NCBI RefSeq assembly: GCF_001194135.2
Contig: NC_068994.1
Span: 21,920,114-21,976,300 of the forward strand
Source of the DNA: Octopus bimaculoides
Taxonomy: Eukaryota
Reading direction: 5' to 3'
DNA: 56,187 nucleotides
Shown: positions 36,035 to 54,728 of the stretch, piece by piece
How positions within the stretch are numbered: the first letter of the stretch is position 1
Layout: each line of letters opens with the position of its first letter
Notes under the pieces: model-generated
Seen by the model: the letters and a program-made list of their open reading frames with translations, nothing else
Told to the model about the DNA's origin: nothing
Databases searched by the model: none
Position numbers and translations under genes: made by a program

Positions 36035-36380
36035 ACAACTGCTTCGAAACCTCCAGCTTTTATACCCATTTATACCAATATACCAATGATAATTAGTGCA
36101 CTTGGTTTTGTGAGTAAATGTCAGTGATAATTGGGATAAGCTAGGGCTTTCAGTAAAAGAAATCAACCAGCTAACTCGCATATTACGAATACAATCAGTA
36201 AATGGAACAGGAAAAATATGCAAAACTTTTCTCAGGTTTAAAATGCGATAGTGTTTTCATTGTCTAGATTTCAACGATGAAACAGTCTTTGTTAGAAACC
36301 AGTTCCTTTCTCAGAGGAAGAATTTAAATAAATAAAAAACAAAAGAAAATATGTATCGATATAAATACACACGCACACAC

Positions 36381-43199: not shown

Positions 43200-44445
43200 T
43201 CGTAAATGATCATGAACAGCTTGACATACCAAACTGTACAGGATATTATGAAGTTTATTTTCATTGGACCATATCGCGCTTATCCCGACACCTAAATTTG
43301 ACCTTCCGAATTCGTCACTGCAATAACTTGATCATAGAGGTGAGAAAAAGTTGGAAACTGCTCGGTGTTACTGGAAATTTGAACATGACAAGTAATTCCC
43401 GTCACCACGAAGTTATAATGGCCTTAAATCTGTATTAACATCATGTGAAGTCCGGATTTTAACACTGAAACATCTTCAAATGAAAAGGCTCGGCAACTAT
43501 TTTGTTGGAATACGAAAATAAGCCATAGTTAGAATAGCTAATAAAGCTTGAAAACACACTTTAAATATAAACTGACACAACGAACACAGGCTATCCTACA
43601 ACAAAATCAAAACAACTAGATATCCTACGACAAAATTAAAACCTAGATCATTTCATTCAGAATAATGTATATGAGTGATTGAAATAAGAAAAAAACAAAA
43701 CGCAGTACTAGGTGAAATAAACTGCACAAAAGCTTGTGATGGAGTACTGACAACTTACCATCTCACCTTGAAAGATACCTTCATTCAATTCAAGAGCAAG
43801 AAATTCCCCACCAAATACCTTCTCACACAAATCATAGAATGTGTCAGCTGAGAACAAATGTAGGTAGGCTATGTAAAACAAAAACTGAAGACCACATCAT
43901 TGCCAACTGATTAAGAATTCCTCTGGATACTATCTTCGCAGTAGCCAGAGCAATCTGGAACAGAGTAAAAACAAAAATTAAAGTAATGAACAACAAATAA
44001 AGATGAACATAAGAAAACGGATGGTTAAAAGAATACTGACTGATCTTGAGAGAAAAGTAGTTATTAAATTAAAATTCAACTAACTCGATGTTGTTAGGGC
44101 CCACAAAATAAAATATCTTTTGTTGTGAAGTTAGCTTCTTACTTGTCGTTAATGCAGCAAGAAAATAGGAGAGAAAGAAGATACTACGGATCATTGATGA
44201 AGAGCCTGCAAATTCAGTAGCCAAAATAATATTCAGCTTAAATCGCTTTCTTATTGGAGAATTTTTGGAGATAGGACGCAACTGCACAATCCATTCGTTA
44301 TAGATAAGATTTTAAAAAAACTCTCATAGTTTAAAATGTGGATGATTGCGTAAAGAATGGCAAAAAGAACAATATTGCGACATGAAAAATGATAGATCAT
44401 TATGAACGCTAAAACTCCATTCAGCAAGAGAATACATACATACAT
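43200..44445 (+). pseudogene. Older decayed R4/Dong-like LINE fragments
   Basis: LGVTGNLNMTSN; YLHSIQEQE; NKC..LCKTKTEDHIIAN; KILRIIDEE, resembling post-RT and zinc-knuckle regions. Confidence 0.55.
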
Positions 44446-44514
44446 ACATACATACATACATACATACATACATACATACATACATACATACATGCATACA
44501 TACATACATACATA

Positions 44515-44985
44515 AAGCACTTGTCCGAAAATGTCATCACGGTATTATCTACCAATGAGACATGATGTTGTAGCTAGGACACTCTATAATGAAATCCGTC
44601 AGAAGGATAATCCCGAGGACACAGTATGGTAGAAGCCATAGCTACTCATAATGAAAAGGAGTACTGATGGAATGTCTCAATGAAGACCTCAATAAAATGT
44701 AAGCACAACAGACCTGATATAATGATTTGGGATAGAGAAAAGAAACTGCGCACAGTTGTGGAAATTAGTTGCCCAGCAGATGTTAACTTCAAGCTGAAGA
44801 TCAGTGAAAAAGAGAATACCTACGCTGAACTATCAAGAAATCTGCAGTTACTCTATCCAGGTTACAAGTTCAGGTTTATACCTGTAATTATTGGGACCCT
44901 GGGATATGTAACACGCTACCTAAATACTAATCTTGAGAAATCAGGCTTCTTAAAATCAGAAAGGAGAAAGCTAATTCGAAGACTA
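44515..44985 (+). mobile_element. R4/Dong-like LINE, RLE domain, 5'-truncated directly after (CATA)n; runs into a gap
   Basis: KHNRPDIMIWD..VVEISCPAD..KISEKENTY (RPD..E..K restriction-like endonuclease motif). Confidence 0.9.
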
Positions 44986-45893
44986 NNNNNNNNNNNNNNN
45001 NNNNNNNNNNNNNNNNNNNNNNNNNNNNNNNNNNNNNNNNNNNNNNNNNNNNNNNNNNNNNNNNNNNNNNNNNNNNNNNNNNNNNNNNNNNNNNNNNNNN
45101 NNNNNNNNNNNNNNNNNNNNNNNNNNNNNNNNNNNNNNNNNNNNNNNNNNNNNNNNNNNNNNNNNNNNNNNNNNNNNNNNNNNNNNNNNNNNNNNNNNNN
45201 NNNNNNNNNNNNNNNNNNNNNNNNNNNNNNNNNNNNNNNNNNNNNNNNNNNNNNNNNNNNNNNNNNNNNNNNNNNNNNNNNNNNNNNNNNNNNNNNNNNN
45301 NNNNNNNNNNNNNNNNTAAAAATTTTTGTTAAAGACAGAAATCTATCGTTGATATTTGATATTTTCTCTGAGACAAATTTGACCAGTTGTCAAAAAAAAA
45401 AAAGGCAAAAAAGAAAAGAAAATACAACAGAAAGTAAAATATTGATAAGCCTTGAAAATATGGAAAAAGAAAAATCTATGATCAGTTAATTTGAGACCTG
45501 TTGTTGCTGCAAAAGGAGGAAGAGCAAACATTTCTAACAGGACTATTGTTTGTTAGCTCGACGCTAACTACCTTATCTGGACTGAGTGTTTGTCAACGCT
45601 AACTACCCGTATAACTCATGTGATTATTTCCGACTGTAGCAACTGTATCCTGGTTGCAGAACTCAATGTATGCCTCTCTTAATCATTAGCCTTATTGGTT
45701 ACATTTACACAGTAGCAATTAAAAGCTTGGGTTTTTAAAGATGACTACATAAACGATAGTGCCATATTCCTCGAATAAAATCGATTAATGAAACATTGAA
45801 AATATGTATTTTCTTGAAGTTATTATTGCCTCACTGTCAATGAATGGTATTTTTAACCGACTTCCTTTCTATCTGCAAATGCGCATGAACAAA

Positions 45894-48445: not shown

Positions 48446-48729
48446 TAAATACAAGGCGGTCTACCAATTCTGGCAACAGCTGCCCTTATTTTTGACGAAC
48501 TATTTATTCTTAGAAATTTCGCGTAGCTCGACTTCGGAGATACCATTTGTATGTATCGAAGCATGCATATATGTAGAGGGATGGGTTCTGCCAGCTCTAA
48601 AAAAATGCCTGAGACACGTCGTGTCTCACAACGGCCTCCTTACGACTACATCAAGAAGCTGAGGAAAGACATGTATGTACGTATGTATGTATGTATGTAT
48701 GTATGTATGTATGTATGTATGTATGTATG

Positions 48730-49712
48730 TCATTATTCAGTTTATTTCAAGGTTTCTTGCCAATAGAAAAAGAACCAATTTCTAACCTAGATCCAAAGCT
48801 CCTTCGTTGGAATTTCAACATCAACAACAGGGTATTTTTGTTTGCATATATGTATGTATGCATGTATGTATGTATGTATGTATGTATGTATGTATGTATG
48901 TATGTATGCATGTGCAGATTTGTATGTTTTATGTATGTATTCTCATGCATATAGTTGCATATCTAGACATGCTCATATATATCTAAATGATAAACTTCTG
49001 GAAAGTTTTACAGATTTTTACAGTTCCAGTGATGGATTGGATCTGTAGTCTTCGAATTAGCTTTCTCCTTTCTGGTTTTGAGAAGCCTATTTTCTCAAGA
49101 TTAGTATTTAGGTAGCGTGTTACATATCCCAGGGCCCCAATAATTACAGGTATAAACCTGAACATGTAATCTGGATAGAGTAACTGCGAATTTCTCAATA
49201 GTTCAGCGTAGGTATTCTCTTTTTCACTGATCTTCAGCTTTATGTTAACATCTGCTGAGCAGCTAATTTCCACAACTGTGCGCAGTTTCTTTTCTCTATC
49301 CCAAATCATTATATCAGGTCTGTTGTGCTTACATTTTATTGAGGTCTTCGTTGAGACATTCCATCAGTACTCCTTTTTTATTATGAGTGGCTATGGCTTC
49401 TACCATATTGTGGGTTCTTATTTCTTTGTCCTCGGGATTATCCTTCCGACGGATTTCATTATAGAGTGTCCTAGCTGCAACATGTCTCATCGGTAGATAA
49501 TACCGTGATGACATTTTCGTTCAATTGCTTATGATGTGGGTGATATCTTCAGTGTGAACTCCACAAAATCTGCATCGATTGTCACATTTTACGGCCTTTC
49601 CTGCATCTCTATCTCTTTTGTGCATTAGGTACTTGTTTGATATTTCCTGTTCCTGGATTGCAAATGTATACCCTTCAAAATGGGAGGTAGTAATCCGGCT
49701 ATTGGTCCATGA
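48730..49712 (-). mobile_element. R4/Dong-like RLE LINE, best copy, about 1-kb 3' end, embedded in (TATG)n
   Basis: C-x2-C-x8-H zinc knuckle CRFCGVHTEDITHIISN*, RPD/EISC/K RLE, stop at 48983, 3' UTR ending AATAAACTGAATAATGA|CATACATA. Confidence 0.92.
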
Positions 49713-50629
49713 TGTATGTATGTATGTATGTATGTATTGTAATGTGGTGCATATAGTGCAGTAATACCTACAACCATTTTGGATACACGTTACTGCCGGT
49801 AGCTAGTACATGTGCTGATGCAGGAGGCAACTTTCCGTGTGAGAGTCTTCCCTACTGTAACTTAGCTTCTCCTTGACTAAGACTTCTTTCAGATTCAAAC
49901 TTTAACTGAATGTTTTGTGTCAAGTGAACTTGTCAGGGAACTCGGAGATTCATTGGGCCCCAGAGTTATAGATACTGGGCTACCCTTGGGAATACGCGCT
50001 GACACTTCTCAGTTGCTACCTTGCTACCCCGCGGGTTAGTCCAGAAAGACCAAGGCTAGAGAAGTACAGTTCAAGAGAGAAAAAAAAATCTACAACTGTC
50101 AGCTTGACGACGGTTTCTGATTGATTAGGTTCCCGGCATCTTTCTATAGCTGGGATTAGTTACCTGTCATTTTGGGTTATTCTTGGTGCTGTCGCTATCG
50201 CCTTCACAGCGAAGATAATGATACTGAGAAATGTGGAAATGCGCAGTCTGATACCACGCTCATCGTTGCGTAGCTATCTTTTCCTGCAACATCGATCTCG
50301 GATCTCAGAGCTGGTCTTTGTCATTGCGGCGGCCTTGAATTTCGCACAACTCCTGCAATGAAATACCGCCACATCAGTACTTCCCTCGCGCAATAAGTCT
50401 AATATACAGGCGCAACAGTCGCGATTCTCTGGGCGCCCGGGTAGCTGTATTTTCCACAGCTAGTATGTACATAGTTTTTGGATGGTTTTTACATATTTTT
50501 AATGACTAATAATTCTCTAATTATACATGTTGTGAAATCCAACTTCTGTGAAGACTGGTATTGAAACTGTTAGTTTCATAATCATGCCTCTCGCACCAAT
50601 AATTACAACTTATGTATGTATTTATGTGC

Positions 50630-54492: not shown

Positions 54493-54529
<37 letters not shown>

Positions 54530-54692
54530 CGACGGGCTTCTTTCAGTTTCCGTCTACCAAATCCATTCACAAGGCTTTGGTCGGCCCGAGGCTATAGTTG
54601 AAGACACTTGCCCAAGGTGCCACGCAGTGGGACTGAACCTGGAACCATGTGGTTGGTTAGCAAACTACTTACCACACAGCCACTCCTGCGCC
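54336..54692 (-). mobile_element. SINE family A, near-consensus
   Basis: Reverse complement match; head GGCGCAGGAGTGGCTGTGTGG. Confidence 0.92.
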
Positions 54693-54693
54693 T

Positions 54694-54726
<33 letters not shown>

Positions 54727-54728
54727 TA

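What the first reader, a model, noticed from the sequence alone, without database searches (positions are those of the whole stretch)
48730..49712. RLE LINE family apparently targeting (CATA)n microsatellites
Seen: five copies (3005+, 22462-, 26683-, 44515+, 48730-) truncate at different 5' points, yet each 5' junction abuts CATA repeats in element-sense polarity; the three visible 3' ends finish ...A|CATACATA; the 3' UTR also carries an internal CATA tract. Known: R4-clade Dong inserts in TAA repeats, while ACAY-repeat targeting is known for Waldo of the APE-type R1 clade. Inference: a restriction-like-endonuclease element with (CATA)n specificity that both exploits and propagates an abundant tetranucleotide repeat. 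A 3' tract alone could be an encoded tail; the 5' flanks are the key evidence.
Basis: partly seen in the sequence, partly recalled or inferred. Interest (0 to 1): 0.75.

Follow-up and report, generated by a model that had tools for sequence, protein, structure and literature searches.

The report
LINE retrotransposon targeting CATA microsatellites
The window holds several dead, front-truncated copies of a Dong-like jumping gene with a restriction-type nuclease; it sits, always in the same orientation, inside (CATA)n microsatellites, a new target for a known kind of microsatellite-homing element.

Summary
Five 5'-truncated copies, plus a probable sixth 69-bp fragment, of one RLE-type LINE lie in the window. 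Copy E (48731-49711, minus strand) encodes a decayed CCHC zinc knuckle and a PD-(D/E)XK nuclease. Every 5' junction abuts same-polarity (CATA)n, although copy C has only three units there. The three visible 3' ends read ...A|CATACATA. Only 0.6-0.8% of position/strand pairs in the window show such an upstream tract.

Laying genomic contigs on the element plus its 26-bp flank array raised joints from 82 to 549. Thirteen of the 15 best joints link different internal truncation points directly to the array.

Full-length or truncated relatives (39-57% amino-acid identity) in unidentified marine eukaryote assemblies are also flanked by (CATA)n. A sister family sits in (ACTT)n/(ACTG)n. More distant insect relatives sit in (TAA)n, the classical Dong target.

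The best reading is a clade of Dong/R4-like elements that insert by target-primed reverse transcription into tetranucleotide microsatellites. The octopus family is CATA-specific, present in thousands of copies, and adjoins about three quarters of the window's CATA tracts.

Not shown: empty sites, nuclease biochemistry, or a phylogeny with Repbase references. I rate it a new variant of a known kind, of moderate interest.

The parts
48731..49711 (-). Copy E. A 5'-truncated dead LINE copy. The ORF remnant (~48989-49711) encodes the CCHC knuckle and the PD-(D/E)XK RLE, with stops and frameshifts. The 3' UTR is 48731-48988.
   Evidence: Translation; homologues at E = 1.6e-93; tblastn to L001 orfB residues 154-394; repeat depth rising 5'->3'.
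48849..48940 (-). Internal (CATA)n tract in the 3' UTR of E, about 118 bp before the 3' end. It is a feature of this subfamily.
   Evidence: TRF. Read loose ends at 48835-48844 are TATG repeats in 146+415+312 reads. The tract is absent in B and in L001, L002 and L014.
48671..48730 (-). 3' flanking (CATA)15 of E. The junction reads ...AATAATGA|CATACATA.
49712..49737 (-). 5' flanking (CATA)6.5 of E. The junction reads ...CATACATCA|TGGACC.
   Evidence: A contig of the sister species (X20) spans this junction, so the insertion is shared.
44515..44985 (+). Copy D. 5'-truncated within the RLE-domain region; 90.8% identical to E; 3' part lost in the N gap at 44986-45316.
44432..44514 (+). 5' flanking (ATAC)20 of D.
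26684..27072 (-). Copy C. The last ~40 codons plus the 3' UTR, with an internal (CATA)n tract at 26799-26873; 88% identical to E. The 3' end reads ...AACAATGA|CATA and the 3' flank is 26637-26683.
27073..27208 (-). Upstream flank of C. A short CATACATACATATATACAT sits at the junction (27073-27091), followed by degenerate CA/CG repeat and then (CATA)15 at 27149-27208.
22462..22822 (-). Copy B, from an older subfamily (72% identical to E). It carries the last ~35 codons plus a 3' UTR without an expanded internal tract. The 3' end reads ...TTGATAA|CATACATACATACATGG.
22823..22875 (-). (CATA)13 lying between the 69-bp fragment and copy B; it is the 5' flank of B.
22876..22944 (-). Probable sixth copy: a 69-bp 3'-terminal fragment of a related subfamily carrying the motif CTTTGTTAGCGACCGGCT. 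It sits in tandem with B, with (CATA)28 upstream at 22945-23058.
   Evidence: Local alignment to the 3' ends of B and F scores 19-21, against a shuffle mean of 14 and sd 2-2.6, so the support is weak.
3006..3425 (+). Copy A, from a diverged subfamily (~40% amino-acid identity to L001 orfB residues 263-391). It is 5'-truncated in the RLE domain and its 3' UTR is missing.
   Evidence: Repeat depth is confined to 3036-3425.
2944..3005 (+). 5' flanking (CATA)15 of A.
36038..36342 (+). Copy F, a 5'-truncated fragment of a related RLE-LINE family (35% amino-acid identity). This copy is flanked by (AC)28 upstream, so it does not follow the CATA rule.
   Evidence: The family consensus 3' end runs on into ...GAACATACATACAAAA, so (AC)n specificity is not supported.

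Best explanation
These are copies of a non-LTR retrotransposon of the restriction-like-endonuclease (R2-like) type, most likely of the Dong/R4 lineage.

**Structure.** The full element is about 4 kb, as seen in relatives. It has one ORF of about 1,140 aa. The ORF carries a conserved N-terminal three-helix domain without zinc fingers (the putative DNA-binding domain), a reverse transcriptase, a CCHC zinc knuckle and a PD-(D/E)XK nuclease.

**What is shown.** Copies lie inside (CATA)n.(TATG)n microsatellites, always with the element sense strand on the CATA strand. The 3' end is fixed (...A|CATA). The 5' ends are variably truncated and each is joined directly to CATA repeats.

**Inferred mechanism.**
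- The nuclease nicks the TATG strand of the array.
- The element RNA reads into the downstream array, so it ends in (CAUA)n. It pairs with the nicked strand and is copied by target-primed reverse transcription.
- Premature termination gives the 5' truncations.
- Second-strand joining occurs within the upstream repeats.
- Repeated hits on the same array give tandem copies separated by CATA tracts.

**Scale.** The family has thousands of copies in this probable octopus genome. It adjoins about three quarters of the CATA-tract bases in the window, so it probably also spreads and lengthens this microsatellite. All window copies are dead.
For: **Domains.** Searches show CCHC, RH, PD, E and K invariant across 10 homologues. 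One search finds RVT_1 and zf-RVT and no APE. One search gives R2 structures at E = 9e-32, with both the RT and the CCHC/RLE regions aligned.

**LINE behaviour.**
- Depth rises 5'->3' over E, from ~2.9e5 to ~2.3e6, against ~60-70 in the unique flanks.
- The same gradient appears in raw reads, ~600-900 rising to ~2,200.
- 398 reads continue past E's 5' end into further ORF sequence.

**Targeting in the window.** Six of six 5' junctions and three of three 3' ends show same-polarity CATA, against a background of 0.6-0.8%.

**Targeting genome-wide.** Joints rise from 82 to 549 once the 26-bp array is included. Thirteen of the 15 best joints link positions 49018...49465 to 49712-49716.

**Other genomes.**
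- L001: (ATAC)59 | full-length element | (TACA)29.
- L002: (CATA)~55 | truncated copy | (CATA)~35.
- L004: (CATA)45 | truncated copy | CATACATACAT.
- L010: (CATA)41 | full-length 5' end.
- L011: 3' end | (CATA)4.5, then unique sequence.
- L014-17: intact 1,139-aa ORF with CATA at both ends, in four samples.

**Family-specific flanks.**
- L098 is a tandem array of four copies separated by (CTTA)n/(ACTG)29.
- The Loxostege element is flanked by (AAT)6 and TAATAATAATA.
- Sense (AAT)n is present in 64 of 80 loci of distant relatives, and ACAT in only 2.

**Tree.** The marine clade has 100% bootstrap support, with CATA-flanked families in both deep subclades.

**Literature.** Dong elements are (TAA)n-specific RLE elements that lack N-terminal zinc fingers (PMC7998251, PMC3812793). 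'Dong-R4' LINEs are abundant and recently active in octopus, at ~4.2 kb per recent insertion (PMC13282606).
Against: - No empty (pre-insertion) site was seen. E is shared with the sister species, and Logan unitigs cannot cross arrays longer than 31 bp.
- Copy C has only a three-unit degenerate tract at its 5' junction. Copy A has no 3' end, and D is cut by a gap.
- Copy F, from a related family, is flanked by (AC)n instead.
- The fraction of all genomic 5' junctions that abut CATA could not be computed; only a lower bound of hundreds is available.
- The N-terminal domain gave no significant Myb/SANT match by sequence or by fold.
- No conserved 3' UTR structure was predicted.
- Clade assignment lacks Repbase reference sequences.
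- There is no biochemical evidence for the nick site or for pairing of the RNA tail.
Confidence: 0.82

Rival explanations
1. The element does not seek out pre-existing CATA arrays. It merely carries a (CATA)n tail. The upstream CATA is made during integration, when the reverse transcriptase jumps from the truncated 5' end of one RNA onto the (CAUA)n tail of another RNA, or slips reiteratively. The element would then create both flanks at essentially unselected sites.
For: - R2-type reverse transcriptases are known to jump between templates (established knowledge, not tested here).
- Head-to-tail arrangements separated by repeat tracts exist: the fragment and B at 22462-23058, and L098.
- L002 has ~45 bp of filler with local duplications at its 5' junction.
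- Downstream tracts can be very short: B 3.5 units, L004 2.75 units and L011 4.5 units.
- No empty site was recovered.
Against: - Upstream tracts are long: 45-59 units in L001, L002 and L004, and 20-28 units in the window. They are not preceded by element 3' UTR sequence, which a template jump into a second RNA would usually leave.
- Orphan CATA arrays that could serve as targets exist in the window, 7 of 20.
- The accepted precedent for the closest relatives, Dong in (TAA)n, is target insertion (PMC7998251).
- This mechanism would still make the element the source of the microsatellite, so it is a variant of the main explanation rather than its opposite.
Confidence: 0.13
2. The association is passive. 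CATA microsatellites are simply very common in this genome, or they mark regions where LINE fragments survive, as proposed for Waldo-A/B near CA repeats in Drosophila. The adjacency would then be coincidental.
For: CATA-type arrays are the commonest tetranucleotide repeat in the window. Seven arrays have no adjacent copy.
Against: - Background adjacency is 0.6-0.8% per position/strand, against 6 of 6 junctions, all exactly at the junction and all in one polarity.
- The same holds in unrelated genomes.
- Related families show different, family-specific repeats.
- A LINE fragment next to an (AC)n array did not generate internal-to-array joints among the 15 best.
Confidence: 0.02
3. The pattern is an assembly artefact. 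The window is a gapped draft with 12 N runs, and scaffolding may have stitched collapsed repeats to microsatellites.
For: The window contains 2,860 N in 12 gaps. One gap cuts copy D and another lies inside copy B.
Against: - Contigs from independent runs reproduce the unique flanks up to the arrays with no differences (pieces table).
- Raw reads and unitigs show the same element-to-array joints.
- Contigs of 0.4-5.4 Mb from other organisms show the same architecture.
Confidence: 0.01

Closest known systems
Dong (R4 clade), the (TAA)n-specific RLE non-LTR retrotransposon of Bombyx, Anopheles, Biomphalaria and Darwinula
   Same: - One ORF of about 1,100-1,150 aa.
- No N-terminal zinc fingers, but a conserved N-terminal helical region.
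- RT, then CCHC, then PD-(D/E)XK nuclease.
- Orientation-specific insertion inside a microsatellite, with the repeat on both flanks and 5' truncation.
- The nearest non-marine relatives found here are (TAA)n-flanked insect elements: Loxostege at 30% identity, E = 2e-80, and 64 of 80 metagenome loci.
   Different: - The target is the tetranucleotide (CATA)n, not (TAA)n.
- The clade is separate, with 100% bootstrap support and about 26-31% RT-region identity to the TAA-flanked element.
- One octopus subfamily carries an expanded internal CATA tract in its 3' UTR.
Waldo (R1 clade), an ACAY-repeat-specific LINE of mosquitoes and earwigs
   Same: It targets essentially the same repeat class, since ACAT is ACAY with Y = T. 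It is also a target-specific non-LTR element (PMC3812793).
   Different: Waldo has an N-terminal APE-type endonuclease and two ORFs. The element here has a C-terminal restriction-like endonuclease and no APE domain. The similarity in target choice is convergent, not homologous.
Togen (NeSL/HERO-related, (TG)n-specific) and the microsatellite-specific HERO families
   Same: They are RLE-type LINEs that home to microsatellites (PMC4640811).
   Different: They have different targets and, according to the literature, belong to a different lineage. They could not be compared here because no reference sequences were available.
R2 (28S rDNA-specific; cryo-EM structures 9nl3, 9dou and 8gh6)
   Same: It is the closest solved homologue. 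The RT and the CCHC/RLE regions align, E = 9e-32 to 1e-16. Its TPRT mechanism is the model for the one proposed here.
   Different: R2 has N-terminal zinc-finger plus Myb domains and a single rDNA site. Similarity is much lower, 113 bits over the full protein, against 289 bits between the L001 ORF (N-terminal region plus RT) and the TAA-flanked Loxostege element.

Membership tests
RLE-type (R2-like) non-LTR retrotransposon | C-terminal CCHC zinc knuckle followed by a PD-(D/E)XK restriction-like endonuclease | tested here: met
   Copy E reads CDNRCRFCGVHTEDITHIISNC ... RH(D) ... RPDIMIWD ... VVEISCSAD ... K. The same residues are invariant in 10 homologues. This region aligns to the R2 RLE (domain 2).
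RLE-type (R2-like) non-LTR retrotransposon | Reverse transcriptase domain upstream of the nuclease, and no APE domain | tested here: met
   This is not present in the truncated window copies. In full-length relatives: RVT_1 at E = 3e-24 to 7e-30, no Exo_endo_phos, FVDD motif, and R2 proteins as the best PDB hits.
RLE-type (R2-like) non-LTR retrotransposon | 3'-anchored copies with variable 5' truncation and no LTRs | tested here: met
   The copies share a common 3' end and have five to six different 5' ends. Depth rises 5'->3'.
R4/Dong clade | RT phylogeny grouping with the reference Dong, R4 and Rex6 sequences | not testable with these tools
   No Repbase or GenBank reference sequences were available. 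As a proxy, the closest relatives outside the marine clade are (TAA)n-flanked insect elements. The octopus literature classes its abundant RLE LINEs as Dong-R4 (PMC13282606, PMC8967140).
R4/Dong clade | Single ORF without N-terminal zinc fingers | tested here: met
   The N-termini of 18 full-length proteins show RRNRDY..W..ELN..GY.KR.K..W...HP and no CCHH/CCHC motif. Pfam finds no zinc finger at the N-terminus.
R4/Dong clade | Diverged N-terminal Myb/SANT-like domain (PMC7998251) | tested here: inconclusive
   The AF2 model has mean pLDDT 80 and three helices. Foldseek against the PDB gave no hit at E <= 0.001, and a profile search against PDB sequences found nothing relevant.
Dong sensu stricto | Insertion into (TAA)n | tested here: not met
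   The flanks are (CATA)n in the window and in L001, L002, L004, L010, L011 and L014-17.
R4 sensu stricto | Insertion into a specific 28S rDNA site | tested here: not met
   No rDNA lies at any junction. An Rfam gathering-threshold scan of L001 and L005 found nothing.
Waldo (R1 clade) | N-terminal APE endonuclease | tested here: not met
   There is no APE domain, and an RLE is present.
Microsatellite-specific LINE (functional class) | The same repeat on both flanks in fixed polarity, and independent 5' truncation points each abutting the repeat | tested here: met
   Window copies; genome-wide joints; other genomes.
Microsatellite-specific LINE (functional class) | Empty sites carry the uninterrupted microsatellite | not testable with these tools
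   E is shared with the sister species. Unitigs break inside arrays, and raw reads exist only for the same species.

The most novel reading that the evidence does not exclude
An old, widespread clade of Dong-like RLE retrotransposons in marine invertebrates uses tetranucleotide microsatellites as its address. The address has switched between families, with (CATA)n probably ancestral and (ACTT)n/(ACTG)n in a nested family. A switch may happen because the RNA's own read-through tail pairs with the nicked target, so that landing in a compound array re-programmes the specificity. In octopus this clade would be the main generator of the genome's most abundant tetranucleotide repeat.
Probability: 0.3. 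Interest if true: 0.65.

Novelty: new variant of a known kind. Interest (0 to 1): 0.5.

Why it matters
Microsatellite-homing RLE LINEs are known: Dong in (TAA)n, Togen in (TG)n, and some HERO families. I found no published description of an RLE or Dong-type element that homes to (CATA)n. Repbase Reports could not be searched, so prior curation there cannot be excluded.

If the finding holds, it matters in three ways:
- It explains why (CATA)n is so abundant, and so often embedded in repeats, in octopus genomes. That affects marker design and assembly.
- It identifies what the abundant 'Dong-R4' elements of cephalopods actually do.
- It provides natural sister families with different simple-repeat targets (CATA, ACTT/ACTG, TAA). 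That is a clean comparative system for asking how R2-like retrotransposons, now being engineered for site-specific gene insertion, read their target.

Tried and rejected
1. **Consensus 3' UTR structure across eight copies and families.** RNAalifold predicted no pairs. Only a short sequence motif, GTTAGA/GTTTGGGA...TCGG, recurs 45-60 nt before the 3' end, and I make no structural claim from it.
2. **HDV-like ribozyme or other Rfam family in the 5' UTRs of L001 and L005.** None was found.
3. **N-terminal domain as Myb/SANT.** A profile search against PDB sequences and Foldseek on an AF2 model gave nothing significant.
4. **Reading 5' junctions genome-wide from the 'loose ends' table.** The table was dominated by subfamily divergence points and Hi-C ligation junctions. 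I replaced it with the joints comparison.
5. **Genome-wide consensus of the 3' flank.** Alignments clip before the terminus, so the 3' flank was not listed. The call did confirm the internal tract.
6. **Empty site in the sister species (X20).** The insertion is shared and the unitigs stop inside arrays.
7. **(AC)n specificity for copy F.** Rejected, because the family consensus 3' end runs into CATACATACA and the best joints do not reach the AC array.
8. **(ACTG)n specificity from L005-L008 alone.** These are one locus seen in four samples. L098 later supported the idea independently.
9. **Reference sequences for a formal clade phylogeny from paper supplements.** None are held.
10. **Identifying the host of the ENA and Logan contigs.** Only L015-17 could be traced, to marine biofilm metagenomes.

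Full report
**What the window is.** It is a gapped draft eukaryotic scaffold: 12 N runs, 34.6% G+C, dense in microsatellites and SINE-like repeats. The best named protein match of the element is an Octopus bimaculoides locus, so the source is probably an octopus. Species names of the sequencing runs are coded.

**Observation.**
- E (48731-49711, -) matches D (44515-44985, +) at 90.8%, C (26684-27072, -) at 88.3% and B (22462-22822, -) at 72%.
- A (3006-~3425, +) is recognisable only at the protein level.
- In element sense, every 5' junction is preceded by CATA repeats: A (CATA)15, B (CATA)13, D (ATAC)20 and E (CATA)6.5. C has only CATACATACATATATACAT, with a longer array 60 bp further up.
- The three visible 3' ends read AATAATGA|CATA (E), AACAATGA|CATA (C) and TTGATAA|CATA (B).
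- A has no 3' end, because repeat depth stops at ~3425. D runs into a gap.
- A 69-bp piece between (CATA)28 and (CATA)13, just upstream of B, is probably a sixth, extremely truncated copy. Its similarity to the other 3' ends is weak.
- Only 0.6-0.8% of position/strand pairs in the window have three or more same-polarity CATA units ending within 10-20 bp upstream. The pattern is therefore far beyond chance.
- Of 20 CATA tracts in the window, 13 adjoin a copy, which is 74% of the tract bases.

**What it encodes.**
- The minus strand of E reads, through two frameshifts and several stops, into a C-x2-C-x8-H-x4-C knuckle, an RH(D) motif and RPD...E-I-S-C...K. This is the CCHC plus PD-(D/E)XK module of R2-like elements.
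- Homologues are found at E = 1e-93 and below, and those residues are invariant among them.
- Full-length relatives of about 1,140 aa carry RVT_1 and zf-RVT and no APE domain.
- The closest solved structures are R2 proteins, E = 9e-32, with both the RT and the nuclease region aligned.
- The N-terminus is conserved (RRNRDY..W..ELN..GY.KR.K..W...HP) and has no zinc finger.
- It is predicted to form three helices, mean pLDDT 80. It gave no significant Myb/SANT match, so its proposed DNA-binding role is an inference from the Dong/R4 literature (PMC7998251).

**LINE behaviour and abundance.**
- Contig word depth over E climbs from ~2.9e5 at the 5' end to ~2.3e6 near the 3' end, against ~60-70 in the unique flanks.
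- Raw reads show the same gradient.
- 398 reads continue past E's 5' end into more ORF sequence, so E is a truncated member of a family with thousands of copies.
- The internal CATA tract of the 3' UTR is family-wide in this subfamily.
- It is absent in B, where the homologous stretch is a short CATAC/ACAC-rich segment, and in non-octopus relatives. It therefore looks like an expanded internal proto-microsatellite rather than a universal feature.

**Genome-wide junctions.** Laying one run's contigs and one run's raw reads on the ORF part of E alone gave 82 joints. Adding only the 26-bp flanking array gave 549. Thirteen of the 15 best-supported joints connect different internal positions (49018, 49068, 49099, 49139, 49174, 49184, 49220, 49290, 49323, 49349, 49433, 49459, 49465) directly to the start of the array. 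These are other genomic copies, truncated elsewhere, that also abut CATA. A comparable stretch, a LINE fragment next to (AC)n, gave 72 joints, and none of the 15 best reached the array. This is a lower bound, not a fraction.

**Other genomes.** Contigs carrying homologous proteins show the same architecture.
- L001: (ATAC)59 | near-full-length 3.95-kb element | (TACA)29.
- L002: CATA arrays on both sides of a truncated copy, with ~45 bp of filler at the 5' junction.
- L004: (CATA)45 upstream and 2.75 units downstream.
- L010: (CATA)41 directly before a full-length 5' end. That end shares the motif GAAGAGGA.GGAGCTC with L001.
- L011: 3' end, then 4.5 CATA units, then unique DNA.
- L014-17: an intact 1,139-aa ORF with CATA at both ends in four independent assemblies. 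Three of these (L015-17) are marine biofilm metagenomes.
- These families share only 39-57% amino-acid identity, so the association is old.

**Flank repeat is family-specific.**
- L098 holds four tandem copies of a sister family separated by (CTTA)n/(ACTG)29. Its 3' end is ...GTGATACC|CTTA and its full-length 5' end follows (ACTT)n.
- L005-8, which is one locus in four samples, has (ACTG)56-172 upstream.
- A moth element (30% identity, E = 2e-80) is flanked by (AAT)6 and TAATAATAATA.
- Of 80 distant relatives from JGI metagenomes, 64 carry sense-strand (AAT)n. Where match coordinates were tabulated, it typically lies 170-270 bp after the matched ORF segment. Only 2 carry ACAT.
- Two relatives end in poly(A).
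- In NJ trees the marine clade has 100% bootstrap support. CATA-flanked families lie in both deep subclades. The ACTT family is nested with weak internal support, and the TAA and poly(A) elements fall outside.

**Mechanism.**
- Shown: position, polarity, fixed 3' end, variable 5' truncation, tandem reinsertion and the nuclease/RT domains.
- Inferred from R2 and Dong biology: the RLE nicks the TATG strand, RNA with a (CAUA)n read-through tail pairs with it and primes TPRT, and the 5' end is joined within the upstream repeats.
- Undecided: whether the address is read by the protein (N-terminal domain or nuclease), by the RNA tail, or by both.

**Rivals.**
- Creation of both flanks by tail synthesis and template jumping is not excluded without empty sites. 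It is disfavoured because upstream tracts are long and are not preceded by 3' UTR sequence.
- Chance association and assembly artefact are effectively excluded.

**Comparison and novelty.**
- The element works like Dong and is most likely a member of the Dong/R4 lineage, but it fails the defining (TAA)n target of Dong proper.
- Its resemblance to Waldo (ACAY target) is convergent, because Waldo has an APE nuclease.
- Searches of the open literature found Dong with (TAA)n, Togen with (TG)n, microsatellite-specific HERO families and Waldo with ACAY, but no RLE element with a CATA target.
- Octopus repeat papers list Dong-R4 as abundant and recently active without discussing targets.
- Repbase Reports could not be searched.
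- I therefore rate it a new variant of a known kind, with interest 0.5.

Noticed in passing
L098:1800-10646 (ENA ERZ25067561 contig; same species as L005-L008): A tandem array of four copies of a sister family (P0034, ~47% amino-acid identity). It holds two ~780-bp 3' fragments, one full-length copy and one copy truncated at the equivalent of position 4807. The copies are separated by (CTTA)n/(ACTT)n and a compound (ACTG)29 tract. This points to a family that homes to ACTT/ACTG repeats.
   Followed up: partly
L005-L008:3200-3992: One locus seen in four samples (flanks 99% identical). The (ACTG)n array upstream of a truncated copy varies from 56 to 172 units, so the flank microsatellite is highly length-polymorphic.
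   Followed up: partly
window 36038-36342 (+): A truncated copy of a related RLE-LINE family with (AC)28 upstream and ACACACGCACACAC downstream. The family consensus 3' end in reads continues ...GAACATACATACAAAA, so this copy's AC flanks are probably not the family's target.
   Followed up: yes
L019-L097 (JGI metagenome contigs, many with related accession prefixes): Distant Dong-like relatives usually end in a compound tail, (ATG)4-10 followed directly by (AAT)n, about 170-270 bp after the matched ORF segment. L012 and L024 end in poly(A)36-53 instead.
   Followed up: partly
L002:6955-7000: About 45 bp of filler lies between the upstream CATA array and the truncated 5' end. It is built from locally duplicated bits (GATTTTAT...TTGGTTTTATATAGATTTGGTTTTATATG), as expected from template slippage at 5' joining.
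   Followed up: no
window 10073-10458, with related copies near 17607, 22117, 27564, 30886, 35112 and 52279: A ~200-bp SINE-like repeat is present as a tandem dimer at 10073-10458 and as at least seven dispersed copies.
   Followed up: no
window 54495-54728: A copy of a second SINE-like family ends ...CCTGCGCCTAT directly before (ACAT)8. A homologous copy near 6191-6461 instead abuts an (AC)n array at 6165-6191. The 3' end is unlike the LINE's, so no partnership is evident.
   Followed up: partly
window 24162-24239: 14-bp repeats (TAGGGTTTTAAGGT / GTTAGGGTTTTAGG) lie on both sides of an N gap. They contain TTAGGG-like units.
   Followed up: no
window 29590-30127: An inverted duplication (29590-29828 against 30115-29883, 78% identity) of GT/CA-rich sequence with CATA tracts in opposite polarity at 29729-29762 and 29947-29962. 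It lies between two N gaps and may be an assembly or palindromic feature.
   Followed up: no
window 48731-48790 and the 3' UTRs of L001, L004, L011 and L014: A short motif recurs 45-60 nt before the 3' end across families that share only 40-57% protein identity: GTTAGAAAT/GTTTGGGATCGG/GTTTAGAATCGGG/GTTGAGAATCGG. In the octopus copies a small TTCTT...AAGAA hairpin (TTCCT...AGGAA in copy F) can be drawn by eye downstream of the motif. No consensus structure was predicted.
   Followed up: partly
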